DNA from: Chiloscyllium plagiosum
Taxonomy: Eukaryota
Length of the DNA stretch: 64,000 nucleotides
Assembly: GCF_004010195.1 (NCBI RefSeq)
Contig: NC_057735.1
Coordinates: forward strand, 11,224,441-11,288,440
Direction of reading: 5' to 3'
The notes beneath the pieces were generated by a model. The model saw only the letters and a program-made list of their open reading frames with translations, made no database searches and was not told the DNA's origin. Made by a program: the position numbers and the translations under genes. This document shows positions 5,386 to 50,657 of the stretch, in pieces. Every line of letters starts with the position of its first letter. Positions within the stretch are counted from its first letter, which is position 1.

Positions 5386-5706
5386 TTTCAGATGTTTTAT
5401 GGGCAGAGAAACATGTTACTGGAATTTTGGGAAGAGCGATCACAATATCTTGTTACTACGAAAATTGGTGGTACCAATCAAACATGAAATATTGGTGTCA
5501 CGGATGGACTCGTCAGTGTAAGTTTATCGCAACGACAAATCGGCCAAATGGGAGAATATCAATCACTGATAACAAAACACAAGGAATATTTCTTGTCACA
5601 ATGAAGAATCTTCAATGGGGAGATGCCGGACGATACAGCTGTGGGATTGAGATTCCTGGTATTTACTCTGACCTCATGTTTAATGTAAATCTGCACATCT
5701 CTGAAG
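5386..5706 (+). CDS. Gene A exon: Ig V domain, CD300/pIgR/TREM type (alternative acceptor gives start 5392)
   Basis: VSDVLWAEKHVTGILGRAITISCYY…KYWCHGWTRQC…GRISITD…FLVTMKNLQWGDAGRYSCG…LHISE. Canonical V-set C/W/D-x-G-x-Y-x-C plus the family's extra C-x6-C. Donor G|GTAAAT. Confidence 0.93.
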
Positions 5707-8700
5707 GTAAATGTCTCAGTGATTTTTACATTACTCTTTGCTGATATGTCTGATCAATGTCTAACCAGGAAGAAAATTGGCCAGGTTTTGGAGTATATTT
5801 GATTTTTGATCTCTCAATAATTGTTTCTTTCCCACAGAAGCCGTCTCTGTTCCTGGACTTCGATTTTTATCCCAACCAAATGTCTCATGTTCTGGGGGTT
5901 CAGTGACAGTCTCCTGTGAGTCTGCCCGGGGATCCCTCCCCATTCACTACACATGGTCTGAGAAGACCCCATTTCAAGATTCAAAGATCTCTTACACCAA
6001 TAAACTGGATCTACATTGTCAATCCTTCACACAGCGACATCATCAATATTACTGCACAGCCTCAAATACTCAGGGAACAAAACCCAGTGAAATTGTTCAT
6101 GTCTCAGTCAGCAATGTAAGAGAGAAGAACTGCAGTTACAGGATACAGACCAACAGCATCAGTAAGTGTGATGTAAACAACGTTTGTTTATTATCTCTCT
6201 CTGGAAAACTGTAATTGATAAAATGGACTCCATTTGTTTCATTATCAGTTCTGAATAAAGCCAATGGTTTACACTGTACTTTGAAAATGAGCAGGTTCAT
6301 AAAATACTACCACAGCATGCAGAAACATTGCAACAACTCCATTGCTACATCACAACCATTTGCTTCCTATAACTAAGTACTTCCCAAATGGGGGAGTTAC
6401 TAAACAAATATTTTGAATATTTTACTGTGGAGAAAGACATGGAGATTAGGAAACTCAGGGAATTAAATATTGATGTCTTGAAAATAGTCCACATTACAGA
6501 AAGGGAAGTGCTGATCGTCTTAAAATACATAATGATGGATAAATCTCCAGGAACCGACCAAGTGTCTCCTAGAACAGTGTGGGTAATTTGGGAAGAAATC
6601 GTAGGGCCTCATAGCAGAGATATTTGTATCATCCACAGCACAGTGAGGTGCCAGAGGACTGGAAGGTGGCTGACACCTTAATTTAGGAAAGGCTGTATGG
6701 AGAAGCCTGAGAATTATAGGCCTGAGTCTGACATCAGTGGTGGGTAAGTTGTTGAAGGGGATTTTGAGAGATCAGATTTACAGGCATTTAGAGAGGCAAG
6801 AACTGATTAGGGATAGTATGTGGGAAATCGTGCATTCTAAACTTGATTGAGTTTTTTGAGAATGTGGCCAAAAATATTGCAGTAGATGTTGTCTGTATGG
6901 ACTTTACTAACAAAGGTTCCGCATGGTAGACTAATTCATAAAGTTAGATCACATGGGATTCAGGCTGAGCTTGTCAATAGAATACAAAATTAGCTTAATG
7001 GCTGGAGACAGAGCGTGGTTGTGGAGGGTAATTCTTTGGATTGGAAGCCTTTGACTTGTGGTGTTCCACGGGGATCGGTGTAATTTATATAAACAATTTG
7101 AATGAGAAATTAGAAGGCATGGTTCGTAAGTTCATGGATGACACCAAAATTGATGGCATTGTTGACAGTGACAAAGGTTATCAACAATTACAAAGGGATC
7201 TTGATCAATTGGTCCAATGGACTGAGGAATGGCAGATGGAGTTTATTTTGGATCAATGTGAGGTATAGCCTTTTGGTAAAACAAACAAGGACAGGATTAA
7301 TACAATGAAAAGTAGGGCCCTGGGTAGTGCTGTCGAACAGAGAGACCCAGGGGATCTTTGAAATTTGCATCACAGGTGGACGGGGTGGTTAAGAAGGTAT
7401 TTAGCATGCTTACTATCATTGCTCAGACCACTGAGTGTAGGAGTTGTGTGTTGAGCTTGTACAGAATGATGGTGAGGCCACTTTTGGAAACTTTGTACAC
7501 TTCTAGTCCCGCTGCTTTCGGCAAGTTATTAAATTGAAGAGGTTTCAAGATTTTGCTGTGACTAGAGGGTTTGAGTGATAAGGATAGGCTGGGAATTTTT
7601 ACACTGGAGGTAGGAGGTTGAGTGGTGACTTTATCGAGGTTTATAACATCATGAGGGGCATAGGTAAGGTGAATAGCAAAGGATTTTTTCACAAGGCTGG
7701 GAGAGTTCAAAGTGAGGGGGCATAGTTTTAAGGTGAGAGAAGAAAAGTGTAAAAGGGGCCAGAAGGGCAACATTTTCACACAGAGAGTGGTTTGTATAGA
7801 GTCACAGAGACACAGAGATGTACAGCACAGAAACATTGGCTTCGGTCCAACTCGTCCATGCCAACCAGATATCCCAACCTAATCTAGTCCCACCTGCCAG
7901 CACTTGACCCATATCCCTCTTAATCATTCCTATTCATATATTCATCCAGATTATTCTTAACCAGATGGGCCAATGGGCTGAGAAGTGGCAGATGGAGTTT
8001 AATTTAGATAAATGCGAGGTGCTGCATTTTGGGAAAGCAAATCTTAGCAGGACTTATACACTTAATGGTAAGGTCCTAGGGAGTGTTGCTGAACAAAGAG
8101 AGATCTTGGAATGCAGGTTCATAGCTCCTTGAAAGTAGAGTCGAACGTAGATAGGGTAGTGAAGAAGACGCTTGGTATGCTTTCCTTTATTGGTCAGAGT
8201 ATAGGGTACAGGAGTTGGGAGGTCATGTTGCGGCTGTACAGGATATTGGTTAGGCCACTGGTTGAATATTGCTTGCAATTTTGGTCTCCCTCCTATCAGA
8301 AAGATGTTGTGAAACTTGAAAGGGTTCAGACAAGATTTACAAGTATGTTGTCAGGGTTGGAGGATCTGAGCAACAGGGAGAGGCTGAACAGGCTGGGACT
8401 GTTTTCCCTGGAGCGTCGGAGGCTGAGGGGTGACCTTATAGAGGTTTACAAAATTATGAGGGGCATGGATAGGGTAAATAGACAAAGTCTTTTCCTTGAG
8501 GTCGGGGAGTCCAGAACTAGAGGGCATAGGTTTAGGGTGAGAGGGGAAAGATATAAAAGAGACCTATGGGGCAACTTTTTCACGCAGAGGGTGTTACATG
8601 TATGGAATGAGCTGCCAGAGGATGTGGTGGAGGCTGGGACTAATGCAACATTTAAGAGGTATTTGGATGGGTATATGATTGGGAAGGGTTTGGAGGGATA

Positions 8701-11700
8701 TGGACTGGGTGCTGGCAGGTGGGACTAGATTGGGTTGGGATATCTGATCGGCATGGACGGGTTTGAGCGAAGGGTCTGTTTCCATGCTGTACATCTCTAT
8801 GACTCTAAATGTTATAATTGTACCAGCCTCTACCACTTCCCCTGGCAGCTCATTCCATACACGCACCACCCTCAGTGTGAAAACATTGCCCCTCAGGTTC
8901 CTCTTATATCTTTCCCCTCTCAACCTAAACCTATGACCTCTCGTTCTGGACTCCCCCACCCCAGGGAAAAGACGTTGTCTATTTACCATATCCATGCCCC
9001 TCATGATTTTATAAATCTCTATAAGGTTACCCCGCAGATTCCGATGCTTCAGGGAAAAATACCCCCAGCCTATTCAGCCTCTCCCGATACCTCAAATCCT
9101 TCAACCCAACAAGACCTTTGTAAACATTTTCTGAAGGTGAAAGTGAGGGCTGCAGATGCTGGAGATCAGTGCTGAAAATGTGTTGATGGAAAAGTGCAGC
9201 AGGTCAGGCAGCATCCAAGGAGCAGGAGAGTTGAAAATGTGTTGCTGGAAAAGCGCAGCAGGTCAGGCAGCATCCAAGGAACAGGAGAGCTGAAAATGTG
9301 TGCTGGAAAAGCGCAGCAGGTCAGGCAGCATCCAAGGAACAGGAGAAAGCGCAGCAGGTCAGGCAGCATCCAAGGAACAGGAGACTGAAGAAGGGCTTAT
9401 GCCCGAAACGTCGATTCTCCTGTTCCTTGTATGCTGCCTGACCTGCTGTGCTTTTCCAGCAATACATTTTCAGCAAACATTTTCTGAAGCCTTCCAAGTT
9501 TCACAATATCCTTCCGATAGGAAGGAGACCAAAATTGCACACAATATTCCAAAAGTGGCCTAACTAATATCCTGTTCAGCCACAACATAACCTCCCAACT
9601 CCGATACTCAATGCTCTGACCAATAAAGGAAAGCATACCAAACACCTTCTTCACGGCCCTATCTACCTATGACTCTACTTTCAAGGAGATATGAACCTGC
9701 TCTCCAAGGTTTCTTTGTTCAGCAATACCCTCCTGGACCTTACCATTAGGTGTATTAGTCCTGCTCTGATTTGCCTTTCCAAAATGCAACACCTCACACT
9801 AAAATCCATCTGCCAATCCCTCGCCCATTGGCCCATCTGATCAAGATCCCATTGTACCCGGAGCTAACCTTCTTTGTTGTACAGTAAAGCTGCAATTTTG
9901 TTGTCACCTGCAACATATAATTACTTACTGTAGCTCCTATGTTCACACACAAATGATTTAGTGAATGACAATGTGGAGTGAAATGCCAGACGACATGGTA
10001 GATGAAGGTACAGTTACAGTATTTAAAACGCATTTGAATAGGTGCATGAATAAGAAATGTTTAGAGAGACATGGGCCAAACGTAGATAAGTGGGACTAGT
10101 ATATTTTGGGAAACATGTTTGGCACTGACGTGTTGAACCGAAGGGTCTATTTCCGTGCTTACTATGACTCTAACATTTTCAGTAGAATTAGCCCACTTAC
10201 AGGTGTCATTGTTACCAGGGAAGGGGAAATAATGCAAAACTCCATGATATCAAAAGGGCTTTTCCCCAAGTAATGAGGTTCCACTTGTCCATGAGGTTCC
10301 CTTGGGTAACTACAAGTGAGAAGGAGACTAATCTGAACATTATTCCCTTGTTTCAACAGGTGAACAATATACTTGTGCTGTTTCTTCAACAACATCACCA
10401 AGAACTGCACATTCCCCAATTATAACTGGAAGTTTCTCGACCAGTCAAAACCAGTCCCCAGGAAAGAATTCCCATGAAACGTATGATATTCTCTGCTTTG
10501 ATTCAGTGTGTGAGATTAACAATATTTTTTAGCCAAACAAGTGAAAGGCTTTTGTTATTTTGGAAATGAAAATGGTGCTGGGTTTATATTGGGCTCCTGA
10601 GTTAGTTCCATATTAAAGGTTCAATTGTTTTTGAAAAGCAAAAATGGAAAATAATTGTTTCTATTTTGTTGGCCCTCAGATGGCATTGCTCAGCTTCATT
10701 ACTTCACCATTAAACTACATCATGTGTGATGTCCCCTGCTTGCCAAACGTACCTTGCTGCTGTCACCTTCAGTGACGTTTCAGGATAGTGTCATTCCTGC
10801 TGGTGAAAAGGAAGGTTTGAAGTGATACCTCTGCACAGGGACAGATAGCTTGCAGGGTTAGGCTTTAGCCTGAGTTCATCAGCCTGAGCTGTTGGAAATA
10901 AGCTGCAGGAACTGTAAGTGTGATATAAACACTGAGGAAATAATTCTTGGAAGTTACAAAGGTGATGAAGAGAAAGTGCCACTTAAGTGTCAGTCAGAAA
11001 TGGAGAATATTGGAAACGCAGTGTGATTTAGTCCACATTTGGGCAGAAATAGCTCAGTGCAGAATTCTTCACAATTCTAGTCCACACCCGAAACAACCCC
11101 CAGATACTGTCTGATTATACCTTTCCAGCAACTTCTGTTTTTCATTCAGGTCTCCAGCACATGTTATTCATTTGTTTTTAAACAGATAATACTCTGTGAT
11201 TCAAAAAGCATTGAAAGTTTATACATTTTATTTGCGGTTATATCTGCATATCTGTTGTCTCAGTTTGTATAAATGAAGATCTTCGGAATCCATTCTCAAA
11301 TCTGTTGTTGCTAATTTTCGGTGACCATCTAGTGTTTTTTTATTCCATTTTTACCAAGTGAAATTTACCACATCTGCAAAAGGCTCTGTGGTGGTACACT
11401 CACCTTCTATGCCAGAGATTGTGAGTTCTCTTCCTCTTCAGAAACATGGGCACATTATCAAGGCTGAGTCTCTAGTGCAGTACTGAGGGAATGCCATGCT
11501 GTTGTGGTACAATCTTCCCAGTGTGATCAATCCAGGCCCCATCTCCCCGTCTCAGGGGAATGTGACAGATCTCATGGTGATATTTGTGGAAGAGCAGGGC
11601 TGTTCTCCCTGGAGACTTGGGCAGTGCCTCTCCCTTACCAATTCCAAATTATATGATCAGTCATCTGATTATTGTTTGTTGGAACATACTGTGTGCAAAG

Positions 11701-14700
11701 TGAATACTATGTTTGCCAATACAACATTTAACACAAGTATTTCACTTCCTACATTGTTTTTGGATGTCCTGAGGTCATAGAAGTCATTTTTAATATATTT
11801 CTTGCATCAATTAGCCAAGAATCGATTGTGAACAAACTTTTCTGTTTTCAATATCACAGTCTGATTTATATTTTGGTCGGTGTACTGGGGGCCATTCTGT
11901 TTGTTATTGCTCTACTTTTGTACCTGAGGCAAATCAAAAAGGGTGAGTTTTTATTTCTCTTCAATTATTTTGTTATATCTCAGCAGCTTATAGTTGCAAA
12001 TAAAAAGAATTTCAGGGTTGGATTTTCTAATGGCTAGATAGCTGATATTCCAGTACAGTCAGGAGCTGCTCAGAATCATAGAGTCATAGAGATGTACAGC
12101 ATGGAAACAGACCCTTCGGTCCAACCCGTCCATGCCAATCAGATATCCCAACCCAATCTAGTCCCACCTGCCAGCACCCGGCCCTTATCCCTCCAAACCT
12201 TTCCTATTCATATACCCATCTAAATGCTCTTAAATGTTGCAGTTGTCCTAGCCTCTACCACATCCTCTGGCAGCTCATGTACCATCCTCTGCATGAAAAA
12301 CTGGCCCCTTGGGTCTCTTTCATATCTTTCCCCTCTCACCCTAAACCTATGTCCTCCAGTTCTGGACTCCCACACCCCAGGTAAAAGATTTTGTCTATTT
12401 ACCCTATCCATGCCCCTCAAGATTTTGTAAACCTCTATCAGGTCACCCCTCAGCCTCTGGATGCTCTAGAGAAAACAGCCCCAGCCTGTTCAGCCTCTCC
12501 CTATAGCTCAAATCCTCCAACCCTGGCAACATCTTTGTAAATCTTATCTGAACGGTTTCAAGTTTTGCAACATCTTTCCGATAGGAAGGAGACCAGAATT
12601 GCACGCAATATTCCAACAGTGGCTTAACCAATGTCCTGTACAGCAGCAACATGACCTCCCAACTCCTATACTCAATACTCTGACCAATAAAGGAAAGCAT
12701 ACCAAACGTCTTCTTCACTATCCTATCCACCTGCGACTCCACTTTCAAGGAGCTATGAACCTGCAATCCTCTTTGTTCAGCAACACTCCCTAGGACCTTA
12801 CCATTAAGTGTATAAGTCCTGCTAAGATTTGCTTTCCAAAAATTCAGTACCTCACATTTATCTAAATTAAACTCCATCTGCCACTTCTCAGCTCATTGGC
12901 CGTTACACCTCCAATTTTGGTGTCATCTGCAAACTTACTAACTGTACCTCTTATGCTCGTATCCAAATCATTTATGTAAATGACAAAAAGTAGAGAGCCC
13001 AGCACCGATTCTTGTGTCACTCCACTGGTCACAGGCCTCCAGTCTGAAAAACATCCCACCACCTCCACACTCTGTCTTCTACCTTTGATCCAGTTCTGTA
13101 TCCAAATGGCTTGTTCTCCCTCCGTTCAGTGAGATCTAACTTTGCTAACCAATCTTCCATGGGGAACCTTGTCAAAAGCCTGACTGAACTCCATATAGAT
13201 CACATTTACTGCTCTGCCCTCATCAGTCTTCTTTGTTACTTCTTCAAAACATTTAATCAAGGTCGTGAGACATGATTTTCCACGCATAAAGCCATGTTGA
13301 CTTTCCCTTATCATTACTTGCCTTTCCAAATACATGTACATTCTGTCCCTCAGGATTCCCTCCAACAACTTGCCCAACACTGACGTCAGGCTCACTGGTC
13401 TATAGTTCCCTGACTTGTCCTTACCTCCTTTCTTGAACAATGGCACCATGTTAGGCAACCTCCAGTCTTCTGGCACCTTACCTGTGACTATCGATGACAC
13501 AAATATTTCAGTAACAGGCCCAGCAATCACTTTCCTAGCTTCCCGCAGAGTTCTAGGGTACACCTAATCAGGTCCTGGGGATTTATCCACTTTTATGCAT
13601 TTCAAGCCATCTAGCGCTTCCTCATCTGTAATATGGACATTTTTCAAGCTGTCCCTACATTCTATATCTTCCATATCCTTTTCCACAGTAAACACTAATG
13701 CAAAATACTTGTTTAGTATCTTCCACATCTCCTGTGGCTCCACATGTGGGAATTCTGCAGAATCTCCATCCTAACAGACGCCTGGAAAATTGAATGTTCC
13801 ACTTGGCAATTCCTCAACACCTGGGGCCACTCATTAAATTCAGAGATTACTCATAACTTTCTGTAAAATTGTTATTCAGTAAAAGTTTGACAAATAAATG
13901 CATGGTCTCACTTTGGAGTAATGATTCCACTAACCCCATACTTCCTTTACATACCCCGAACTATACATTCCCAAGATTCCTTCTACCCCTCAGACTCATG
14001 CTGGGAATCATGGGTGCAATAGTGATGGATGTAGTTCAGTACATGATTATGCACACTGCAAGGAGAAAGTGAGGACTGCAGATGCTGGAGATCAGAGCTG
14101 AAAAATGTGTTGCTGGAAAAGCGCAGCAGGTCAGGCAGCATCAAAGGAGCAGGAGAATCAACGTTTCGGGCATAAGCCCTCTTATGCCCGAAACATCGTT
14201 TCTCCTGCTCCTTTGATGCTGCGTGACCTGCTGTGCTTTTCCAGCAACACATTTTTCAGCTATGCACACTGCAATATGTGCTCAGTTTGAATATTTTAAA
14301 CATTCAGCATTCCTGTTAAAGTTGTTTGAACAACTGTATTGTAATGTTTCAGGGACATTCTGCATCATGTGTCATCAGAGAACTAAGAGTCTTAATGATG
14401 AACAGGTAAGAATAATAAATATTAACTTGCTGAATATTGTTTAGAAATTTGAAGAACATAGGATTTACAGCACAGAAATTAGCTATTTGGCCCATCTGCG
14501 ACATACTGGCTCTTTTGCTCCACACAAGACATCTCCCATGACTCTTCATCTAACCTTTCCAATTCCCGCTTCCAACTCCTGCTTTGTTTACGTGCTGATC
14601 AAATTATCTCTTAAATTTCACAATGCATCTTCACTCAATTCCCCCCTAGGAAAGAAAAAGGAGAGAGTTCAAAAGAAACCTTGTCATCTGAAGAGTGTCA

Positions 14701-15860
14701 GAAAGTGGAACTTATTGCCATTAGGGGTCCTTGAGGCAAATACTATGCTGGATAAGCACATGAGGGTGAAATGAATAGCAAGATATGTTGATGAGATTGG
14801 ATGAAAATGGATAGAGGAGGCTCAAGAGGAGAATTACTTTAGTACTGGGCTGCATTATACACTGGAAATAGAATCATAGAGTCAGAGAAATGTACAGCAC
14901 AGAAACAGACCCTTCAGTCCAACTCATCCCTGCCAGCCAGATATCTCAATCTAATCTGGTTCCATTTGCCAGCACTTGGCCCATATCCCTCTCAACCCTT
15001 CCCATTCATATGCCCATCCAGATGCCTTTTAAATGTTGCAATTATATCAGCGTTCACCACTTCCTCTGGCAGCTCATTCCATACACGCACCACCCTCTAC
15101 GTGAAAAGGTTGCCCCTTAGGTCTCTTTTATATCTTTCCCTTCTCACTCTAAACCTATGCCCTCTAGTTCAGAACTCCCCCACCCCAGGAAAAATACTTT
15201 GACTATTTTACCCTATCCACGCCCTATCCACGACCTTCATGATTTTATAAACCCCTGAGGTCACCCCTCAGCTTTCAACACTCCCTGGAAAACATCCCCA
15301 GCCTATTCAGCCTCTCCCCATAGCTCAAATTTTCCAACCCTGGCAACATCTTTGTCAATCTTTTCTGAACCCTTTCAAGTTTCACAACATCCTTCCGATA
15401 GGAAGGAGACCAGAACTGCAAGCAATAATAATTTATAATAACTTCTAATACTGTACATTGATTAAGAATAATCAAGAATTTGTTTTCTCTTCATAATAAT
15501 GCACATCACCATTCAAGTGAATGAAAAATACATTTTTTTCAAATTTAGGAATTGCCTTCAGTGGAAGAGAACTTGGTATATGCAAACATAAACTACATTC
15601 AAAGGAACACAGCAGAAAGACAGAGAGAGAGAGGAAGCAACTTGAATAATGATGAAATCACATACGCAGTGATGGCATTTCAAAAGAAATCTTCATCACT
15701 GAGAGGTGGGCTGGCAATGCACACAGGTGACAACTCAGACAGTGTCATCTACAGTGACCTCAACTTTCCAAACCAGCCACCAAAGGGGAATAAAAAAGCC
15801 CCAATGCACAACATCCCTCAGGAATCTGGAGGGGACGTTTATGCTGATATTGCTTTTTAG
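5386..15860 (+). CDS. Gene A: inhibitory-type CD300/pIgR-like (MDIR-like) receptor, V-C2-stalk-TM-ITIM tail; join(5386..5706,5838..6161,10360..10480,11860..11942,14353..14405,15549..15860); leader exon not seen in window
   Basis: All six exons have AG/GT ends and compatible phases (1-1, 1-1, 1-2, 2-1, 1-0, 0-stop), giving one open frame. Every exon has a paralogue in gene C. Confidence 0.88.
5838..6161 (+). CDS. Gene A exon: Ig C2-like domain (FCRL/PECAM-like)
   Basis: tttcccacag|AA GCC…; GGSVTVSCESARGSLPIHYTW…QYYCTASN…SEIVHVSV…NCSY; donor A|GTAAGT. Confidence 0.92.
7961..8805 (+). mobile_element. Young 5'-truncated CR1 LINE (ORF2 C-terminus plus 3' tail)
   Basis: ORF 8111..8728 (LVRPLVEYCLQFWSP…RRLRGDLIEVYKIM…TRGH…WNELP) followed by the tail ctctatgactcta. 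Confidence 0.9.
9137..9474. mobile_element. Penelope-derived fold-back insertion (family B) with internal tandem repeats of about 59 bp
   Basis: 15-bp TSD aaacattttctgaag at 9122-9136 and 9475-9489; inverted arms; repeated gctggaaaagcgcagcaggtcaggcagcatccaagg units. Confidence 0.8.
9385..9414 (+). ncRNA. Minimal hammerhead ribozyme core (family B), stem I disrupted
   Basis: CTGAAGA-A-GGGC-TTAT-GCCC-GAAA-CGTC-GA. Confidence 0.55.
10360..10480 (+). CDS. Gene A exon: Ser/Thr/Pro-rich stalk
   Basis: cccttgtttcaacag|GT GAA CAA TAT ACT TGT… = SEQYTCAVSSTTSPRTAHSPIITGSFSTSQNQSPGKNSHET; donor AC|GTATGA. Supplies the required phase 1-to-2 bridge. Same length in gene C. Confidence 0.85.
11860..11942 (+). 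CDS. Gene A exon: uncharged transmembrane segment
   Basis: atatcacag|T CTG ATT TAT… = LIYILVGVLGAILFVIALLLYLRQIKK; donor G|GTGAGT. Confidence 0.92.
12075..13742 (-). mobile_element. CR1 LINE (RT plus 3' tail), gene-A-specific insertion
   Basis: ORFs 13126..13563, 12862..13068 and 12443..12877 carry NYRPVSLTS, QHGF, KFADDTK. The empty site caggagctgcatgtggg is present in gene C at about 49146. Confidence 0.92.
14062..14260. mobile_element. Penelope-derived fold-back insertion (family B)
   Basis: 14-bp TSD tatgcacactgcaa (14048-14061 and 14261-14274); palindromic; empty site in gene C at about 49477. Confidence 0.85.
14353..14405 (+). CDS. Gene A exon: 53-nt juxtamembrane cytoplasmic exon with CxxC
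   Basis: tgtttcag|GG ACA TTC TGC ATC ATG TGT…CAG|GTAAG = GTFCIMCHQRTKSLNDEQ. Phase 1-to-0 is needed to put the last exon in the ITIM frame. Confidence 0.85.
14868..15425 (-). mobile_element. CR1 LINE 3' fragment, gene-A-specific
   Basis: CR1 3' tail plus LQFWSPSYRKDVVKLERVQKR; absent from the matching gene C intron (about 50215). Confidence 0.88.
15549..15860 (+). CDS. Gene A terminal exon: cytoplasmic tail with ITIM/ITIM-like motifs
   Basis: tttag|GAA TTG CCT…; LVYANI, ITYAVM, VIYSDL, DVYADI, then TAG. Confidence 0.92.
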   Translation, partial: ELPSVEENLVYANINYIQRNTAERQRERGSNLNNDEITYAVMAFQKKSSSLRGGLAMHTGDNSDSVIYSDLNFPNQPPKGNKKAPMHNIPQESGGDVYADIAF

Positions 15861-40786: not shown

Positions 40787-43700
40787 GTGAGTGACCATCT
40801 GAGTTGTATATTCAGATAATCCACACTTGTTGAAATCCACTGTGTTATAAAGTAGAAATGTTTAAATATTTGAAGATACATAATTGGAAAAGGGAGAGCT
40901 TGTGACACAATGGGTAACATTGTTATTGCTGTGACAAATGCTGAGAGTTCAATTCTCACAAAAGTACACTTTTCAAAGGAATGTGTCTTCTCACAAAGCC
41001 AAACAGGTTCATTTTCAACCTACAAATCCTTCCAACATACAGAGAGCAGGACTGGGTGAGATTCCACATCAGTCTTTTCCAATGCACACTTAAAAATCAC
41101 ACAAAACAAAGTTTTAGTCCAGCAGGTTTATTTGGAAGCACTAGCTTTCAGAGCACTGCTCCTTCATCAGGTGAACACAACCAGCTAATGAAGAAGCAGC
41201 TAATGCTTCCAAATAAACCTGTTGAACTATAAACTGGTGTTGTGTGATTTGTCTACCCCAGTCAAACACCGGCACCTCAAAGTCATGGTTATCCAATGCA
41301 GAGTGACACCCTTCACATCACAGCAACTGGCTTCAGGCTGGTGACAAGCTGCAGAAAACAGACACAGCATGGACTTTGTCTGCCCCATGTGACTCTAAAT
41401 ATGGGCGCCATTGAAGCTTAAATGAACAAACATAAAAGTACATGAACAACATCACAAAATGTAATAATTCTACTGAACACTTTATAATCATGCTGCAGAG
41501 TTCCCAAATAATTTAGAGCGGCATAATGAATTATGAATTAAATTAAAAGGGTACCATAACCTTTCTTTTTTGTGTAAAAAAGCAGCACAATTATTTTAAT
41601 TTGACTGAAATTTTCAATTTTCAATACACACTGAAAAGTGTATGAGTAATAAGCCCTCAAACAAAACATTTTGAGTTTGCTTTTATTTCTTTTATTTTTG
41701 AAGATCAATTCATTAAATATCGCTCTGAGGCTCAGTCAAAAAAGGAGCTGGTTGGTTTATATTTCTCTTCACTTCGAAAAGCCTTTTTCCTTTCAGTCTA
41801 ACTTGAATCAAGTTGTTTGCTCTCTTTCAATTCCATTGATTTACATATTACAATGTAACACTGCAATAAAGTTAATGCTCATCATTGCAATCGCTCCATT
41901 AATGATAAAGAAATTTTTGGAAGACTCAAGAATAAAATTCTCAGTGTCGCTTTACCCTAGGCTACAGCTCTGTGAATTCTGTTACATGAAAATCCCCTTA
42001 AATGTTTTGTGGCTCCGGCCCACCAACTTCATGCAGAATATTTCATGGACAGAAATCTGAAACATGCACCTCTCTGTTTTCACAATTCTCTCTCTTTCAA
42101 GGCTTCCTTTTTCCAGTAAGGTCTCTGTCTCCAAACCAGCATCATTTTTAATCATTCACGTATCTCCGTCCCTTTCATCTCAGCTCTCCACCTCTTCACT
42201 TACAATTAAAATCCTTGTTATTTTACTCAAGAATTGTTTGCCACATAAAGGGCAGTTCTCCCAACAAAACTGATGGTCTGGTATTTATTGAAGTAAAGTC
42301 TACCCAGTCATCAACAGGCTTCTCCTCTTCAACACCAGGACGCAATGTGGCAGCAATTTCAACATTTTCTCATGAACCATCTCTCTGGCACAATCAGTAA
42401 ATTGCTTCTGTTATTTTATTATCCATACAATGACAACAATATGTGATTATAAATAATCCTGCCTTTGCTGCCCTCAAGATCCTCCACATTGATCTCTCTC
42501 CCATCGTGAACGGTCCCTTGCTGAACTTTAATTCTCTTCCTTTCCCACTTGAAGCCTCTCATCATCTTGCCTGGGTCACCTGTTGTATCTGCCCCGTTAG
42601 CCCTGAAAATGCAGCCCCTGAGCCCACCATGAGTCTCCACACACTCCCCTCTTCTCCCTGGATGAATCCCTCCTTCTCCGGTCGGAGTAAGGATCCTTCA
42701 GCACCTGTACCCTCCTTCGCACTGATCCCCAGCCGACTCCAACCCAGGCCTGTCACTCAGGCTGCTCTCTGGGGGGGCGGGGGCAACATTTCGATGATGT
42801 CACACACGGTGGAGTCAGAGCCCACTGCGGGCAGCACAAACCCAATTTCAAGATTGTCCCAAAGCTTGACCAGTGGGGTAAGAGAATATCCCGACTGTTT
42901 CAATCATTCCCTGGGAATTCGTAACAGCCTGAGGCTCGGATAAGGGTTTATATTAATGATTACATTCATCATGTACTGGATGGAATGTAGCTGATTAAAA
43001 TGTATCTGTTTGTAATAAGCAATTCTTTCCAGTTAAATCTCTGAAATATTGTCTCCTCATTTTCAGGTGCTTTATGGGCAGAGAAACACGTTACGGGAAT
43101 TTTGGGAAGAACGATCACAATATCTTGTCATTACGAAGCACGGAGGTACCAATCACACATGAAATATTGGTGTCATGGATGGACTCGTCTGTGTCAGGTT
43201 ATAGCAACGACAAATTGGCCAAATGGGAGAATATCAATCACTGATCACAAAACACAAGGAATATTTCTTGTCACAATCACGAATCTTCAATGGAGAGATG
43301 CAGGATGGTACAGATGTGGGATCGAGACTCCTGGCCATGACCTAATGTTTAATGTAAAGCTGCACATTTCTGCTGGTACGTGACTCATTTTCTTTTAAAT
43401 TACTCTCTGCTGATGTGTCTGATCAGTGTTTTATCCAGGAAGAAAAGTGACAAAGTGTTGGGGAATATTTGAATTTTCTCACAGAATAATTGTTTCTTTC
43501 CCACAGAAGCTGTGTCTGTTCCTGGATTTCAATATTTATCCCAACCAACTGTCTCATGTTCTGGGGGTTCAGTGACAGTCTCTTGTGAGTCTACCCAGGG
43601 ATCCCTCCCCATTCACTACACATGGTCTGAGAAGACCCCATCTCAAGATTCAAAGATCTCTTACACCAATAAACTGGATCTACATTGTCAATCCTTCACA

Positions 43701-46700
43701 CAGCAACATCATCAATATTACTGCACAGCCTCAAATACTCAGGGAACAAAACCCAGTGAAATTGTTCATGTCTCAGTCAGCAATGTAAGAGAGAAGAACT
43801 GCAGTTACAGGATACAGACCAACAGCATCAGTAAGTGTGATGTAAACAACGTTTGTTTATTATCTCTCTCTGGGAAACTGTAATTGAGAAAATGCACTCC
43901 ATTTGTTTCATTATCAGTTCTGAACAAAGACAATGGTTTACACTGTACTTTGAAAATGAGCAAGTTCATAAAATCCTACCCACAGCATAGAGAGACCTTG
44001 CAACATCTCCAATGATTCCAGCAAATTAAAATAGCATTTGATTGACAGACAATTTGCATTTTTCTAACAGAAGGAATTATTAAATTCAGTCAGTGACTGT
44101 TGTGTGCAGATTTAGGACACATATTGGAGACAGATTGGAGATCAGTTGCACAAATGAAATACAGAGGAACCTCAATTATCTGAACGTCGTTGATACTAAT
44201 TTTGGGTTATCCAAACAGGTTCTCAAGGTCCCGATGCTTTGGTGAACTGTATTATCCAAACATTCGATTATCCAGACAAAACATTCCCTTCCCGAGTCAT
44301 TTGGATAATTAAGGGTCCTCTGTATATGTAAATATTGCCTGCAGCCATTTCCTGATATGATCTGTTTGAGCTGTCAGAGAAGAAGCAAGTCAGCATCAAG
44401 TCGAAGTGACACCCGGGAACTGTATTTGGAACTATCAGCAGCAGCTCATGTGGCTGCACTCTCACTTCTGATGGCAGCATGTTGGGGGTTCCAGTTCCCC
44501 TTCGGGGTTAAAATTCAGCTGGATCCCACTGCCCAGCAGAGAGAAGTAATGCTGTGCTGTGGCAGGTGAGACAGTGTCGATGAGGCGATAAACTGAGAAC
44601 CTGTTCCCCCTTTAGGAATGGCACCATTTGTAAACTATTTACAGAATAGAGGTTCTCCTGGTGTCTGAGCAAGCATTCATTCCTCAATCAATGTTACTAA
44701 AAACAATCAGATTTTTGATAGAATGATTTCAATGCTATTGGCTGCTGCAATTTAAGTTTGAGATATTGTTGCATTCCAATTGTTTGTTTCCATCTCCTCA
44801 GATCCTGTAATGTACCAAAACCCATCTGATTCATTAATGTCCTTTAGGGAAGGAAATCTCTAGCCTTTCCAGGTCTGGTCTACATGGGCCTTCAGCAATG
44901 TGGTTTCTTCTTAAACTGCCCTCTTCAAAAGGTTTAGAAAGTCACTCAGTCAGGTGTAATTAGGAATGGGCAACAAAAGCTGGCCGTTAAAGACCAAAAG
45001 ATAGAGAATTAACAGTTTATTTGTTGCAGAAATAATTCACATAAAACACACCCAAGCCGTATTGTCTGTGTACCCCTTGGAGATGGGGAACCTCATCTGT
45101 CTACCTCATGGATCCTTATGGTTCAGTTGATGGAAAATCTTTGGTGGGTTATGTGTCTATAGATGAGGTTTCCCATTATTCCTGCAAGCTCAGAAAACCC
45201 CCTCAAGAGGGTGGAAGTGACCACTGTCTATGTCAACAAGTGACAGCTCCATGTGAAACCCGTGGTTTTAAACAAGTGGGATATCTGGGTCGTAGTTACC
45301 AGCCCAAACCCTTTAACAAACCCCAATGGAACACACCAACTCTCAGATTCAGGGAAAAAAGTAACCGGGATCGTCATTGTGTGTAACCACAGGAGATGGG
45401 AGAGATACTAAACAGAAGAGGAAGTGCTGAAAGTCTCAAAATGCATAACAAGAGATAAATCTCCAAGATCCGATCAAGTGTCATCCAGACCAATGTGGGA
45501 AATTAGGGAAGAAATTGTGGGGCCCCTAACAAAGCTATTTGTATCATCCACAGTCACAGGTGAGGTGCTGGAGGACTGGAGGGTGGCTAATATTATTCAT
45601 TTAGTTAGGAAAGGCTGTATGAAGGAGCCTGGGAATTATAGATCTGCAAGTCTGACAGTAGTGGTGGGTAGGTTGTTGGAGGGGATTTTGAGAGATTGCA
45701 TGTATATCCATTTGGAGAGGCACAAACTGATTAGGTATCATGCATTGGAAATCGTGTGTTACAAACTTGATTGAATTTTTTGAGGACGTAACTAAAAAGG
45801 TTGATTAGGGTAGAGCAGTAGGCAAGGGTTCACATGGTGGACAAAATAAAGTTAGGTAACATGGGATTCAGGGTGAGCTTGCCAATTGAATACAAAATTA
45901 ACTTGATGGCAGGAGACAGAGGGTAATGGTGGAGGGTCATTTTTTTCGATTGGAGATGTGTGACCAGTGGTGTTCTGCAGGGATCGGATTAAGTTATCTA
46001 ACTGATTTGAATGAGAATTTAGAAGACATGGTTAGCAAGTTTGTGGATGACACCAGAAATTGGTGGTATTGTTGACAGTGATGAATGTTTAGGGTGGCAC
46101 GGTGGCACAGTGGTTAGCACTGCTGCCTCACAGCGCCAGAGACCCGGGTTCAATTCCCGCCTCAGGTGACTGACTGTGTGGAGTTTGCATGTTCTCCCCG
46201 TGTCTGCGTGGGTTTCCTCCGGGTGCTCCGGTTTCCTCCCACAATCCAAAGATGTGCAGGTCAGGTGAATTGGCCATGCTAAATTGCCCGTAGTGTTAGA
46301 TAAGGGGTAAATGTTGGGGTATGGGTGGGTTGCGCTTCGGCGGGTCGGAGTGAACTTGTTGGGCCGAAGGGCCTGTTTCCACACTGTAATGTAATGTAAA
46401 ATGTAATGTTATCTATGATTACAAAGGGATCTTGCTCAATTGGGCCAATTAGCTGAGGATTGGCAGATAGAGTTTCATTTGGATCAATGCGAGCTATAGC
46501 CTTTTGGTAAAACGAACAAAGACAGGACTTATACAATTAAAGGTAGGGCCCTGGGTAATGCTGTCGAACAGAGACCCGCGGATCTTTGAAATTTGCATCA
46601 CAGGTAGACAGGGTGGTTAAGAAGGTATTTAGCATGCTTACCGTCATTGCTCAGACCAATGAGTGTTGGAGTTGGAACATCACGTTGAGCTTGCATAGAA

Positions 46701-49700
46701 TGATGGTGAGGCCACTTTTGGTTTCGTGTGTACAGTTCGAGTCACCCTGCTTCAGGAAGGTTATTATTAAATTGAAGAGGTTTCAGAAAAGATCAACTAA
46801 GATGTTGTCGTGATTGGAGGGTTTGAGTGATAAGGATAGGCTGGGACTTTTTCCACTGGATCGGAGAAGGTTGAGAGGTGACTTTATAAGAGGGTAATAA
46901 AATCATGAGGTGAATAGCAAAGGTTTTTAATCATGAGGCAGAGTGAGTTCAAAGTGAGGAGGTATATTTTTAAGATGTGAGGAGAATAATGGAAAAGGGA
47001 CCTGAGGTGCCACACGTTCACACAGAGGGTGGCTCATTTGTGGAATGAAATGGCAGAGGACATGGTGGATGAAGCTGGAGTTACAACATTTAAACGACAT
47101 TTGATTAGATACATGAAGAGAAAAGGTTTGGAGTGACATGAGCCAAACGCAGAAGAGTGGTACTAGTTTATTTTGAGAAACTTGTTGGGCACTGATGCGT
47201 TGAACAGAAGGGTCTCTTTCCGTGCTGACCATGACTCTAACATTTTCAGCAGAGTTAGACCACTGATAGGTGTCATTGTTACCATGGAAGGGGAATTGAT
47301 GCAAAACTCCATGATATCAAATGGGCTTTTCCCCAAGTAATGAGGTTCCATTTGTCCATGAGGTTCTCTTGGGTAACTACAAGTGAAAAGGACACTAATC
47401 TGAACATCATTTCCTTGTTTCAACAGGTGAACAATATACTTGTGCTGTTTCTTCAACAACATCACCAGGAACTGCACATTCCCCAAATTCAAGTGGAAGT
47501 TCCTCTGCCAGTCTAACCCGACTCTCCGGAAATAATTCCCATGAAACGTATGATATTATCTTTTTCATTCCATATGTGAGGTTTACAATATTTTTGAACA
47601 ATTTTGGCGAAACGTGTCAAAGCCTTTTGTTGTTTTGGAAATGAAAATGGTGCTGGGTTTATATTGGGCTCCTGTGTTAGTTCTATATTAAAGGTTCAAT
47701 TGTTTTTGAAAAGCACAAATGGAAAATAATTGTTTCTATTTTGTTGGCCCTCAGATGGCATTGCTCAGCTTCATTACTTCACCATTAAACTACATCATGT
47801 GTGATGTCCCCTGCTTGCCAAACGTACCTTGCTGCTGTGATCTTCAGTGACGTTTCAGGATAGTTTCAATCCTGCTGGTGAAAAGGAAGGTTTGAAGTGA
47901 TATCTCTGCACAGGGACAGATAGCTTGCAGCGTTAGGCTTTAGACTGAGCTCATCAGCCTGAGCTGTTGGAAATAAGCTGCAGGAACTGCAAGTGTGATA
48001 TAAACACTGAGGAAATAATTCTTGAATGTTACAATGGTGATGAAGAGAAAGTGCCACTTAAGTGTCAGTCAGAAATGGAGAATATTGGAAACTGTGATTT
48101 AGTCCACATTTGGGCAGAAATAGTTCAGTGCAGAATTCTTCACAATTCTAGTCCACACCCGAAGCAACCCCCAGATACTGTCTGATCATACCTTTCCAGC
48201 AACTTCTGTTTTTCATTCAGGTCTCCAGCACATGTTATTCATTTGTTTTTAAACAGATAATACTCTGGTGATTCAAAAAGCATTGAAAGTTTATAAATTT
48301 TATTTGCGGTCCTATCTATATGTCTATTGTGTAAGTTTGTGTAAATGAAGATCATCGGAATCTAACATCCATTATCAAACCTGTTGTTGCTAATTTTTAG
48401 TGGCCATCCAGTGTTCTTTTATTCCATTTTTACTGAGTGAAATTTACCACATCTTAAAAAGACTCTGTGGTGGTACACTCACCTTCTATGCCAGAGATTG
48501 TGAGTTCACTTCCTCTTCAGAACCATGGGCACATTATCAATGCTGAGTCTCTAGTGCAGTACTGAGGGAGTGCCATGCTATTGTGGTACTATATTCCCTG
48601 TGTGATGAATCCAGACCCCATCTCCCCGTCTCAGGGGAACGTGACAGATCTCATGGTGATATTTGTGGAAGAGTAGGGCTGTTCTCCCTGGAGACCTGGG
48701 CAATACTTTTCCCTTAACAATCCCAAATTGCATGATCAGTCATCTGATTATTGTTTGTTGGAACATACTGTGTGCAAATTGAATACCATGTTTGCCTAAA
48801 AAACATGTAATATTTCACTTCCTGCATTGTTTTTGGATGTCCTGAGGTCATGAAAGTGTTTCTTAATATATTTCTTGCATCAAATGGCCTAGAATCGATT
48901 GTGAACTAAGACTGTCCCTTTTCTATTCTCAATATCCCAGTCTGGTTTACGTTGTGGTCGGTGTACTGGGGGCCATTCTGGTTGTTTTTGGTGTTGCTCT
49001 ACTTTTGTACCTGAGACAAATCAACAAGGGTGAGTTTTTATTTCTCTTCAATTGTTTCATTTACCTCAATAGCTTGTAGTTGAGAATAGTAAGTATATCA
49101 GACTTGGATCTTCTAATGGCTAGAGATCTGATATTCCAGTACAGTCAGGAGCTGCATGTGGGAACTCTGCAGAATCTCCATCCTAGCAGACGCTGAAGGG
49201 ATTGCCCTGAAAATTGAATGTTCCACTTGGCAATTCCTCAAACCTGGGACCATTCATTTAATTCAGAGATTTTCAATAAGATTCAGTAAAATCATTACTC
49301 AGTAAAAGTTAGTGGCCAAATAAATGAGTGGCCAAATGTCTGAGTAACTGTTGAACTAACCCCATACTTACTTCACATGTCCCGAACTATATCTTCTCAA
49401 GCCTCCTTCCACCCCTCAGACCCATGTTGGGAATTGTGTTGTGATGGTGATGAATGAAGTTCAGTGCATACAGGATTATGCACACTGCAAAACATGTTCA
49501 GTTTGAAGATTTTGAACATCCAGCATTCCTGTCAAATTAGCTTGAACAATTCAATTGTAATGTTTCAGGTACACTCTGCATCATGTGTCAACAAAGAGAT
49601 AAGTCTCTTAATAATGACCAGGTAAGGATGATAAATATTAAACTGTTTAGAAATTTGCAGAACATAGAAAATGTCTGTGCTGGAAATCCTGTTTGGTCCA

Positions 49701-50657
49701 TATAGTGCATGTTAGCTCTTATCCTCCTCACAAGATTTCCTGAACTCCTTTTCATCTAACCCTATCAATTTCCAACTCCTGCTTTCTTCACATGCTTATC
49801 AAATTCTCTCTCAAATATCACAATGCAACTTGACTCAACTCCTCCCTTCGAAAAAAAATAGAAAATTCAGGAGAAACCTTGTTATCCGAAGAATGTCAGA
49901 AAGTGGAACTTATTGCCATTAGGGGTCCTTGAGACAAATATTGTAAATCCATTCAGAGGGGCAGCTGGATAAGCACAGGAGGATGAAATGAATAGCAAGA
50001 TATATCAATGAGATTGGATGAAAATGGATAGAGGAGGCTCAAGAGGAGAAGGGCTTTTAGCCAAAACATCAACTCTCCTGCTCCTCGGATGCTGCCTGAC
50101 CTGCTCTGCTTTTCCAGCACCACACTTGCAACTCTAATCTCAGCATCTGCAGTCCTCACTTTTGTCTAGTCAAGTGGAGAATTATTTTACTACTGGGTTG
50201 AAATGCTTGTTCTACACTGGAAGTGATTTATAATATCTTCTATTACTGTATATTGATTAAGAATCATCAAGAATTTGCTTTCTCTTCGTAATGACACAAA
50301 TCACTCATTCAAGTGAATGAAAAATATGTTTTTCTTCCATTTTAGGAATTGGTGCCAGTGGAAGAGAACTTGGTATATGCAAACATAAACCACATTCAAA
50401 GGAACACAGCAGAAAGACAGAGAGAGAGAGGAAGCAACTTGAATAATGATGAAATCACCTACACAGCATTGGAATTTCAAAAGAAATCATCATCACTGAG
50501 AGGTGGGCTGGCAATGCACACAGGTGACAACTCAAACAGTGTCACCTACAGTGACCTCAACTTTCCAAACCAGCCGCCAAAGGGGAATAAAAAAGCCCCA
50601 ATGCACAACATCCCTCAAGAATCTGGCAGGGACGTTTATGCTGATATTGCTTTTTAG
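40750..50657 (+). CDS. Gene C: complete inhibitory-type CD300/pIgR-like (MDIR-like) receptor, 414 aa; join(40750..40786,43067..43375,43507..43830,47427..47547,48941..49029,49569..49621,50346..50657)
   Basis: Seven exons total 1245 nt in one open frame with canonical splice sites: signal peptide, V, C2, stalk, TM, CxxC, ITIM tail. Confidence 0.92.
41090..41286. mobile_element. Family A fold-back element in gene C intron 1, with hammerhead motif 41139-41173 (-)
   Basis: Inverted arms; minus strand CAC-CUGAUGA-A-GGAGC-AGU-GCUCU-GAAA-GCUA^-GUG. Confidence 0.7.
43067..43375 (+). CDS. Gene C V-domain exon
   Basis: GALWAEKHVTGILGRTITISCHY…KYWCHGWTRLC…DAGWYRCG…LHISA; donor G|GTACGT. Confidence 0.93.
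43507..43830 (+). CDS. Gene C C2-domain exon
   Basis: 324 nt, paralogue of 5838-6161; donor A|GTAAGT. Confidence 0.92.
44162..44322. mobile_element. Tc1/mariner (pogo/Tigger-like) MITE
   Basis: TA|CAGAGGAACCTCAATTATCTGAA…TTTGGATAATTAAGGGTCCTCTG|TA: imperfect TIRs of about 23 bp with a TA TSD. Confidence 0.8.
45390..47238 (+). mobile_element. Old CR1 LINE predating the A/C duplication
   Basis: Degenerate RT and 3' tail, collinear with 6500-7798 plus 9971-10170. Confidence 0.82.
46092..46408 (+). mobile_element. HE1-like V-SINE nested in CR1
   Basis: Full head and core, (taatg)n tail; absent from the gene A copy at about 7175. Confidence 0.92.
47427..47547 (+). CDS. Gene C stalk exon
   Basis: SEQYTCAVSSTTSPGTAHSPNSSGSSSASLTRLSGNNSHET; donor AC|GTATGA. 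Confidence 0.85.
48941..49029 (+). CDS. Gene C TM exon
   Basis: aatatcccag|T CTG GTT TAC… = LVYVVVGVLGAILVVFGVALLLYLRQINK; donor G|GTGAGT. Confidence 0.92.
49569..49621 (+). CDS. Gene C 53-nt CxxC exon
   Basis: GTLCIMCQQRDKSLNNDQ; tgtttcag|…CAG|GTAAG. Confidence 0.85.
50051..50169 (-). mobile_element. Family B Penelope-derived fragment
   Basis: Imperfect 12-bp TSD tcaagaggagaa/tcaagtggagaa; empty site in gene A at 14822. Confidence 0.75.
50346..50657 (+). CDS. Gene C terminal ITIM exon
   Basis: LVYANI, ITYTAL, VTYSDL, DVYADI, then TAG. Confidence 0.92.
   Translation, partial: ELVPVEENLVYANINHIQRNTAERQRERGSNLNNDEITYTALEFQKKSSSLRGGLAMHTGDNSNSVTYSDLNFPNQPPKGNKKAPMHNIPQESGRDVYADIAF

What the first reader, a model, noticed from the sequence alone, without database searches (positions are those of the whole stretch)
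5386..50657. Paired inhibitory/activating immune-receptor cluster with hybrid CD300-type V plus FCRL-type C2 architecture
Seen: three tandem paralogues ordered inhibitory, activating pseudogene, inhibitory. They share one ectodomain design but have different TM/tail exons. Known: the extra C-x6-C after KYW marks CD300/pIgR/TREM/FcmuR V domains, mammalian CD300s have no C2 domain, and V+C2 modular receptors (MDIRs) were described in skate. Inference: this is a chondrichthyan paired-receptor family of unknown ligand, possibly lipid- or Ig-binding. Small exons (leader, stalk, 53-nt) are invisible in the ORF track and easily mis-annotated.
Basis: partly seen in the sequence, partly recalled or inferred. 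Interest (0 to 1): 0.8.

Follow-up and report, generated by a model that had tools for sequence, protein, structure and literature searches.

The report
Shark MDIR paired immune-receptor gene cluster
Three neighbouring copies of a shark immune-cell receptor gene (two brake-type, one broken accelerator-type) are real, but they belong to a receptor family first described in skates in 2006, and one copy is already a database gene model.

Summary
The window carries three tandem copies on the + strand, each with a V-set exon followed by a C2-like Ig exon.

- **Gene C (40750-50657)** is a complete 7-exon gene. Its codons equal RefSeq XP_043572421.1, "uncharacterized protein LOC122563080" of Chiloscyllium plagiosum, at 414 of 414 residues.
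- **Gene A (5392-15860)** has six intact exons. No leader exon was found in the window.
- **Gene B** is an activating-type pseudogene. Its V exon is broken and half its C2 exon is deleted, but its charged TM exon is intact.
- **The N gap** lies inside an intergenic LINE, not in any exon.

The V domain is of the pIgR/CD300/TREM type and the C2 domain is FCRL5-like. Both match clearnose-skate MDIR3 at 53% and 62% identity, so this is the known MDIR family, and shark MDIR clusters appear undescribed in the searched papers. This conflicts with two papers stating that cartilaginous fish lack pIgR and FcRL homologues.

First readers of this scan noted similar genes elsewhere on the same chromosome.

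The parts
5392..5706 (+). Gene A, V-set exon (phase 1 to 1), intact, with KYWC-x6-C
   Evidence: AG acceptor and GT donor, open frame. Pfam V-set E 1.4e-9. Cys pattern.
5838..6161 (+). Gene A, C2-like Ig exon (phase 1 to 1), intact
   Evidence: 96.6% DNA identity to the gene C exon. tblastn match to family proteins.
10360..10480 (+). Gene A, Ser/Thr-rich stalk exon (phase 1 to 2)
11860..11942 (+). Gene A, uncharged transmembrane exon (phase 2 to 1)
   Evidence: Hydrophobicity scan, splice sites and phases.
14353..14405 (+). Gene A, 53-nt juxtamembrane exon (phase 1 to 0)
15549..15860 (+). Gene A, cytoplasmic tail exon with LVYANI, ITYAVM, VIYSDL and DVYADI, then the stop
21731..21918 (.). Assembly gap inside an intergenic LINE reverse-transcriptase ORF (20609-21970). 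It is not part of any receptor exon.
29506..29816 (+). Gene B, V exon remnant of 311 nt. The frame is broken near the start, the homologous frame has an in-frame stop, and Cys residues are lost.
29955..30124 (+). Gene B, first ~170 nt of the C2 exon. The rest of the exon and its donor are deleted: the counterpart of gene C 43677-45006 is missing.
35092..35160 (+). Gene B, stalk exon of the activating type. The acceptor is intact. The 3' end is uncertain because no good donor stands in the needed phase.
36205..36295 (+). Gene B, TM exon with Asp and Arg (VVWDVIRW...) and a 4-residue tail, then the stop
   Evidence: 91% identity to the TM of the C. punctatum and C. plagiosum activating proteins.
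40750..40786 (+). Gene C, leader exon (ATG, phase 0 to 1). It is the only leader found in the window.
43067..43375 (+). Gene C, V-set exon (phase 1 to 1)
43507..43830 (+). Gene C, C2-like Ig exon (phase 1 to 1)
47427..47547 (+). Gene C, stalk exon (phase 1 to 2)
48941..49029 (+). Gene C, uncharged TM exon (phase 2 to 1)
   Evidence: Helix 262-294 in the model.
49569..49621 (+). Gene C, 53-nt juxtamembrane exon (phase 1 to 0)
50346..50657 (+). Gene C, tail exon with LVYANI, ITYTAL, VTYSDL and DVYADI, then the stop
   Evidence: The whole 7-exon model equals XP_043572421.1.

Best explanation
This is a stretch of the MDIR (modular domain immune-type receptor) multigene cluster of the whitespotted bamboo shark. 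It holds two inhibitory-type genes and, between them, a dead activating-type gene.

Each gene encodes a type I membrane protein. From the outside in, the parts are a signal peptide, one pIgR/CD300-type V domain with the extra C-x6-C disulfide, one FCRL-like C2 domain, a short Cys-closed hairpin, a Ser/Thr-rich stalk, and a single TM helix.

In genes A and C the TM is uncharged. It is followed by a disordered tail of about 120 residues with three ITIM-like tyrosines and a C-terminal YADI. The inferred mechanism is as follows: ligand binding at the V domain brings the tail next to an activating receptor, Src-family kinases phosphorylate the ITIMs, and SHP-1, SHP-2 or SHIP-type phosphatases are recruited to damp the cell.

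The activating form has an invariant Arg in the outer TM and almost no tail. It would signal through an ITAM-bearing adaptor chain. Gene B is a decayed copy of that form.

Shown here: the gene structures, the domain types, family membership, the pseudogene lesions, and that both signalling types share one ectodomain lineage. Inferred: expression, phosphatase or adaptor coupling, and the ligand. My best guess for the ligand is a lipid or other non-protein ligand, as for CD300, TREM2 and TIM. That guess is weak.
For: - **Gene structure.** Gene C has 7 exons, all AG/GT with phases that fit. Its codons match XP_043572421.1 at 414 of 414. Gene A has 6 exons, all open, with canonical sites.
- **Domain types.** V. 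C2.
- **MDIR membership.** Identity to skate MDIR3 (ABC86797.1) is 53% for V (E 1e-32), 62% for C2 (E 2e-40) and 30% for the tail (E 3e-8). MDIR3 and MDIR5 are among the 58 hits, all elasmobranch, of the C2 search.
- **Both signalling types across the family.** Of those 58 proteins, 22 have ITIM tails, 13 have the W-x-V-x-R-W TM, and 23 are unclassed. In an alignment of 22 family proteins the tyrosine motifs sit at the same places in the 12 ITIM-tail proteins, which come from sharks and batoids.
- **Ectodomains group by lineage, not by signalling type.** Window V and C2 fall in orectolobiform clades (SH-aLRT 99 and 98) that hold both types. The type changes at least 10 times on the V tree and 8 times on the C2 tree.
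- **Model.** Two confident Ig domains (block pLDDT mostly 85-95), one TM helix, a disordered tail.
- **Selection.** dN/dS between A and C is 0.50 for V and 0.39 for the tail.
Against: - There is no expression evidence.
- Gene A has no leader exon in the window. None of its six exon peptides is an exact part of any of the 234 stored database proteins. It may be unannotated or dead.
- The fourth tyrosine (DVYADI) and gene A's ITYAVM are not canonical ITIMs.
- Akula et al. 2014 report that no FcR gamma chain was found in cartilaginous fish. The adaptor for the activating forms is therefore unknown.
- Nothing here bears on the ligand.
- The trees used the quick method only, on a hand-picked set, and no shuffle control was run for the change counts.
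Confidence: 0.85

Rival explanations
1. These V-C2 receptors are the Fc or polymeric-Ig receptors of cartilaginous fish that the literature regards as missing. On this reading the V domain binds IgM, IgW or IgNAR as pIgR D1, FCMR and FCAMR do, and the ITIM and charged-TM forms act like inhibitory and activating FcRs.
For: The best V hits in the PDB are pIgR, and FCMR also matches. The C2 is nearest to FCRL5. Outside elasmobranchs, 7 of the 9 non-elasmobranch top V relatives that I looked up carry a pIgR or pIgR-like name (these names are automatic). Two papers say sharks lack PIGR and FcRL and ask how they handle Ig transport and phagocytosis (passages read).
Against: There is one V domain only and no pIgR-like tail. 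The CD300 and TREM matches are as good per domain as the pIgR D1 matches. The large, fast-turning paired cluster fits leukocyte regulatory receptors. No binding data exist.
Confidence: 0.12
2. They are plain CD300 orthologues that have gained an extra domain, and they sense phospholipids such as PS, PE or ceramide on dying cells.
For: The V domain superposes on CD300a, CD300c and CD300lf at 32-35% identity, rmsd 1.2-2.5 A. Sequence E is about 1e-12. RefSeq names several relatives CMRF35-like.
Against: The single-V architecture that defines CD300 is not met. Identity to skate MDIR is far higher, at 53-62%. Synteny with the CD300 locus was not testable. Lipid-binding residues were not examined.
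Confidence: 0.2
3. The whole stretch is a decaying locus. All three copies are silent pseudogenes, and the RefSeq model of gene C is only an ab initio prediction.
For: Gene B is dead. Gene A lacks a leader in the window. Introns are full of retroelements. There is no RNA evidence.
Against: Gene C has 7 open exons with perfect splice sites. dN/dS between A and C is below 1 in V and in the tail. The tail motifs are conserved from sharks to skates.
Confidence: 0.05
4. The three copies are an assembly artefact, meaning haplotypes or collapsed repeats laid side by side.
For: An assembly gap lies between copies 1 and 2.
Against: The copies differ by 3-19% in a patchy way. They have different retroelement insertions, and copy 2 has a different 3' half. 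Haplotypes would be nearly identical.
Confidence: 0.02

Closest known systems
MDIR3 and MDIR5 of the clearnose skate, Raja (Rostroraja) eglanteria (ABC86797.1, ABC86800.1; Cannon et al. 2006, Immunogenetics 58:362; paper not held, known to me from reference lists and recall)
   Same: The V and C2 domain types are the same: 53% and 62% identity to MDIR3. The ITIM tail is homologous, with tyrosines at matching places. MDIR5 has the W-x-V-G-R-W TM of the activating type. Both form a multigene family with both signalling types.
   Different: The skate proteins string 4-5 domains (V-V-C2-V-C2 and V-C2-V-C2). The window genes are the minimal V-C2 form. They are shark genes in an orectolobiform-specific clade.
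CD300 (CMRF35-like) family of mammals
   Same: A V domain with the extra C-x6-C disulfide, 32-35% identity, rmsd 1.2-2.5 A. Paired ITIM and charged-TM members in a gene cluster (from the abstracts listed).
   Different: The CD300 chains in the PDB are single V domains of about 110 residues. Here an FCRL-like C2 domain follows the V domain. Orthology was not tested.
Polymeric Ig receptor (pIgR) and pIgR-like proteins of bony vertebrates
   Same: Best-scoring V-domain relatives by sequence (E 8.6e-44 summed over domains). The teleost pIgR ectodomain is the top Foldseek hit.
   Different: pIgR is built of V domains only. It has no C2 domain and no ITIM tail or charged TM of this kind.
FCRL5 (Fc receptor-like 5)
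   Same: The C2 domain matches six of its repeated domains. The best three score 22-25 bits and share a CE-x-x-GS-x-PI-x-Y motif and a YYCTA-x-N motif. The Atlas lists an FCRL2 cluster at 0.93.
   Different: FCRL ectodomains have no pIgR/CD300-type V domain. Per-domain E is only about 1e-4, so this is a domain-type kinship, not orthology.

Membership tests
MDIR (modular domain immune-type receptors) | Sequence homology of the Ig domains to the skate MDIR proteins | tested here: met
   V 53% identity (E 1e-32) and C2 62% (E 2e-40) to MDIR3. MDIR3 and MDIR5 were recovered by the C2 search.
MDIR (modular domain immune-type receptors) | Modular ectodomain built from a CD300/pIgR-like domain type and an FcR-like domain type | tested here: met
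   One V plus one C2 in genes A and C. Relatives carry 1-3 units. The definition itself is recalled from the 2006 abstract and from the text of PMC3031540.
MDIR (modular domain immune-type receptors) | Multigene family holding ITIM-tailed members and members with a positively charged TM | tested here: met
   Genes A and C against gene B. Of 58 relatives, 22 are ITIM-tailed and 13 have the charged TM.
MDIR (modular domain immune-type receptors) | Expression as spliced mRNA in immune tissues | not testable with these tools
CD300 | V domain with a second disulfide (C-x6-C after KYW) | tested here: met
CD300 | Ectodomain of a single V domain | tested here: not met
   A C2 exon follows the V exon in all three copies.
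CD300 | Orthology or synteny with the CD300 locus | not testable with these tools
   No conserved flanking gene lies in the 64 kb, and no tool for shark chromosomes was open.
PIGR | Two to five tandem pIgR-type V domains and no C2 domain | tested here: not met
   One V and one C2.
PIGR | Binding and transcytosis of polymeric Ig | not testable with these tools
   Needs binding and transport assays.
FCRL | Ectodomain made only of FcR-type C2 domains | tested here: not met
   The N-terminal domain is V-set of the pIgR/CD300 type.
FCRL | C2 domain of the FCRL subtype | tested here: met
   FCRL5 E 5.3e-25 over six domain matches, and the next PDB hit is 1.2e-3. Per-domain support is modest, about 1.6e-4.

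The most novel reading that the evidence does not exclude
MDIR-type V-C2 receptors are the Fc and polymeric-Ig receptors of cartilaginous fish. They preserve an ancestral design that joins, in one chain, the pIgR/FCMR-type V domain and the FcRL-type C2 domain. In bony vertebrates these two domain types are found in separate gene families. If so, the published view that PIGR and FcRL first arose in bony fish would be wrong at the level of domains and perhaps of function.
Probability: 0.12. Interest if true: 0.8.

Novelty: new member of a known kind. Interest (0 to 1): 0.35.

Why it matters
Paired inhibitory and activating Ig-type receptors set thresholds for innate immune cells. This stretch shows the birth-and-death dynamics of such a family in a shark at base-pair detail: shared ectodomain, swapped signalling exons, a dead activating copy, and patchy gene conversion.

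It also bears on an open question. A 2014 survey and a 2026 review state that cartilaginous fish have no PIGR or FcRL homologues, and they ask how sharks handle Ig-dependent uptake and secretion. These genes carry both domain types, so they are obvious candidates to test.

The family itself was described in skate in 2006, and gene C is already a RefSeq model. The gain is therefore annotation and a testable lead, not a new kind of system.

Tried and rejected
- **RNA evidence.** The look-up of sequencing runs listed 24 runs, and none on record as RNA holds the stretch.
- **Orthologous DNA and synteny.** Gene B's stalk donor could not be compared with an intact orthologue, and the chromosome context could not be read.
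- **Leader exons of genes A and B.** blastn-short, a peptide pattern in six frames, and tblastn found only gene C's leader. A leader-like match at 35299-35352 has E 0.51 and I take it for chance.
- **Further family exons elsewhere in the window, either strand.** None found.
- **Papers.** Cannon 2006 (PMC3701310) and Cannon 2010 (PMC2823954) are not held. What I say of the 2006 paper beyond its citation and the sentences in PMC3031540 is recalled. "MDIR" plus "shark" gave 3 unrelated papers. "modular domain immune" gave 1 paper. Supplements were not asked for.
- **Positive selection on V, considered and rejected.** dN/dS between A and C is 0.50.
- **Trees with named CD300, PIGR, FCMR and FCRL sequences, considered and left out.** PDB rankings stand in for them.
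- **No search or fold was run on an exon-joined window sequence.** That joined step was left out, and window exons were searched one by one.

Full report
**What is there.** The window is repeat-rich vertebrate DNA of about 42% GC. A direct-repeat search and a self-BLAST show three tandem copies of one unit on the + strand. Copy 1 (about 3823-16717) and copy 3 (about 41468-51500) are collinear over their whole length at 77-95% identity. Copy 2 (about 27332-30124) shares only the 5' part, at 78-83%. ORFs in each copy translate to an Ig V-set domain (Pfam E 1.4e-9 and 5.9e-10) followed by a second Ig domain (Ig_3 E 1.5e-6; Ig_C17orf99 E 1e-5, at its cut-off, for copy 3). Copies 1 and 3 end in a 102-103-residue tyrosine-rich ORF with no Pfam family. 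A tblastn of nine family proteins against the window found nine hit clusters. All are on the + strand and all lie within these three copies.

**The assembly gap, tested first.** The N run 21731-21918 lies between gene A's stop (15860) and gene B's V exon (29506). The ORF that runs into it from the left is a reverse transcriptase (RVT_1, E 1.4e-32). The letters to the right continue the same LINE type on the same strand. Two LINE motifs stand 294 nt apart as written, against 339 and 346 nt in two other copies. The flanks therefore look like one element, and the written gap length is probably some 45-52 nt short. Continuity and frame cannot be proven. No receptor exon touches the gap. A 17-N run at 3593-3609 lies upstream of gene A. 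I filled neither gap.

**Gene models.**
- **Gene C.** I derived the model by hand from the sequence and from tblastn of relatives. It has seven exons: leader 40750-40786, V 43067-43375, C2 43507-43830, stalk 47427-47547, TM 48941-49029, a 53-nt exon 49569-49621, and tail 50346-50657. All have AG acceptors and GT donors. The phases chain as 0>1, 1>1, 1>1, 1>2, 2>1, 1>0, 0>stop.
- **Match to RefSeq.** A later search returned P0203, which is XP_043572421.1, [quoted passage not shown], 414 aa. Walking the exons codon by codon gives 0 mismatches in 414 codons plus the stop. The window is thus bamboo-shark chromosome DNA, and gene C is already a correct RefSeq model.
- **Gene A.** It has the same six exons from V to tail (5392-5706, 5838-6161, 10360-10480, 11860-11942, 14353-14405, 15549-15860). 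All are open, with canonical sites and fitting phases. No leader was found in the window. None of its exon peptides is an exact part of any of the 234 proteins I had stored.
- **Gene B.** It is a pseudogene. Its V exon (29506-29816, 311 nt) is out of frame with its acceptor, carries a stop in the homologous frame, and has lost Cys residues. Only the first ~170 nt of its C2 exon remain before a deletion junction. Further on lie an activating-type stalk exon (from 35092) and an intact TM exon 36205-36295, which reads VVWDVIRWVLFTLLVICSVSVTMFTRKK-stop.

**Domain types.**
- **V domain, by sequence.** It has four Cys, including KYWC-x6-C. Against PDB sequences it hits pIgR (8.6e-44 summed over several domains), CD300 members (1.2e-12 to 5.8e-11), single pIgR D1 constructs (2e-10 to 3.7e-10), TREM2 (5e-8), NKp44 (2e-7), TLT-1, FCMR, TREM1 and TIM-4. 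In all, 43 distinct sequences score E<=0.01.
- **V domain, by structure.** I ran an AlphaFold model of P0203 with a 22-row family alignment. It has two confident Ig domains, with 10-residue block pLDDT mostly 85-95 apart from a dip at the domain junction. It also has a TM helix at 262-294 and a disordered stalk and tail. Foldseek puts the V domain on CD300a, CD300c and CD300lf (32-35% identity, rmsd 1.2-2.5 A) and on TREM2. The teleost pIgR ectodomain ranks first.
- **V domain, wider relatives.** In a scan of 1.84 billion proteins, 2320 scored E<=1e-3 against the V exon and 98 scored E<=1e-30. I looked up ten of the top hits. Nine are not elasmobranch proteins, and seven of those nine carry an automatic pIgR or pIgR-like name in their cluster.
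- **C2 domain.** It hits FCRL5 at 5.3e-25 through six domain matches. The best three score 22-25 bits, about 1.6e-4 each. Everything else scores 1.2e-3 or worse. The Atlas lists an FCRL2 cluster at 0.93 (a lead only).

**Family.** I searched the C2 region of a Heptranchias relative. That gave 58 proteins at E<=1e-3 among 85 candidates, all from sharks, rays, skates or sawfish. Among them were modular domain immune-type receptors 3 and 5 of the clearnose skate. Gene C's exons match MDIR3 directly:
- V: 53% identity, E 1e-32.
- C2: 62% identity, E 2e-40.
- Tail: 30% identity, E 3e-8, with the tyrosine motifs at matching places.

[quoted passage not shown] The hybrid V-plus-C2 design is therefore the MDIR design, not a new one.

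**Paired nature.**
- I applied a crude rule to the 58 relatives. It classed 22 as having an uncharged TM with ITIM-like motifs, 13 as having the W-x-V-x-R-W TM without ITIMs, and 23 as neither (partial or odd models).
- I built quick maximum-likelihood trees of V and of C2 domains, with 31 rows each. The rows came from 24 hand-picked named proteins out of the 234 stored, plus gene A's exon. Gene B was left out as broken.
- On these trees the window domains fall in orectolobiform clades (SH-aLRT 99 and 98) that mix both signalling types. Skate MDIR V domains sit in a batoid clade.
- The signalling type changes at least 10 times on the V tree and 8 times on the C2 tree. These counts are descriptive, and no shuffle control was run.
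- Ectodomains thus follow lineage, while the charged TM exon and the ITIM tail are old and shared by sharks and batoids. This is the usual pattern of paired receptors that exchange ectodomain exons.
- Between A and C, identity is patchy. The C2 exon is 96.6% identical (dS 0.04). The V exon is 88% identical (dS 0.21, dN/dS 0.50), and introns 1 and 2 are 81-85% identical. This suggests local gene conversion.

**How it most likely works.** This part is inferred from established knowledge of ITIM and charged-TM receptors and is not shown here. Genes A and C would dampen leukocyte activation by recruiting SH2 phosphatases to the phosphorylated motifs LVYANI, ITY(T/A)(A/V)(L/M) and V(T/I)YSDL. The activating paralogues would use the invariant TM Arg to pair with an ITAM adaptor. 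Which adaptor is open, since Akula et al. 2014 report no FcR gamma chain in sharks. The ligand is unknown.

**Relation to the literature.** Akula et al. 2014 (passages read) state that no homologues of PIGR, FcRL or the gamma chain were found in sharks. A 2026 review repeats this and asks how cartilaginous fish manage Fc-dependent functions and Ig secretion. The domain matches above show that both domain types exist in sharks, joined in one chain. Whether they bind Ig is untested, and this is the boldest reading the data allow. I found no paper on shark MDIR clusters in the searched library. Supplements and the 2006 paper itself were not available to me.

**What could not be done.** The fold used the stored database protein.

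**Context.** First readers of this scan noted similar CD300/MDIR-like genes on the same chromosome. Their notes run from about 197 kb before to 187 kb beyond this window, with one more 3.7 Mb away. These notes are unchecked.

**Verdict.** This is a real, correctly read locus and a new member of a known kind. Interest is modest.

Noticed in passing
window 43795-43830 with 47427-47445 (gene C); 6126-6161 with 10360-10378 (gene A): A Cys just after the C2 domain (NCSY...) is invariant in 22 family proteins. A second Cys, ...(E/Q)YTC at the start of the stalk exon, is present in most of them. Together they suggest a small disulfide-closed hairpin that spans the exon junction. The model shows two short strands there.
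   Followed up: partly
window 5392-6344 against 43067-44014: Identity between genes A and C is patchy. The C2 exon and the start of intron 3 are 93-97% identical (C2 dS 0.04). The V exon and introns 1-2 are 81-88% identical (V dS 0.21). This looks like local gene conversion.
   Followed up: partly
stored proteins P0003, P0026, P0205, P0208: Several database models of relatives look mis-built. P0003 runs two tandem activating genes together through what is 3' flank in the window. P0026 and P0208 read on into an intron after the C2 or stalk exon. P0205 lacks the stalk and TM.
   Followed up: partly
window 3593-3609: A second, 17-letter N run lies upstream of gene A's V exon, in retroelement-rich DNA where its leader might be expected.
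   Followed up: no
window 20609-21730, 24324-25073, 33182-33955: Three LINE reverse-transcriptase ORFs (RVT_1, E 1e-25 to 1e-32). One is intergenic with the gap. One lies in gene B between its broken C2 exon and its stalk exon.
   Followed up: partly
window 49569-49621 and 14353-14405: The 53-nt exon encodes two Cys next to the membrane (LCIMC and FCIMC). The alignment of relatives shows Cys in the same stretch of several ITIM-tail proteins, which makes these possible palmitoylation sites.
   Followed up: no
window 35299-35352: A weak leader-like peptide match (E 0.51) between gene B's stalk and TM exons. Probably chance.
   Followed up: no
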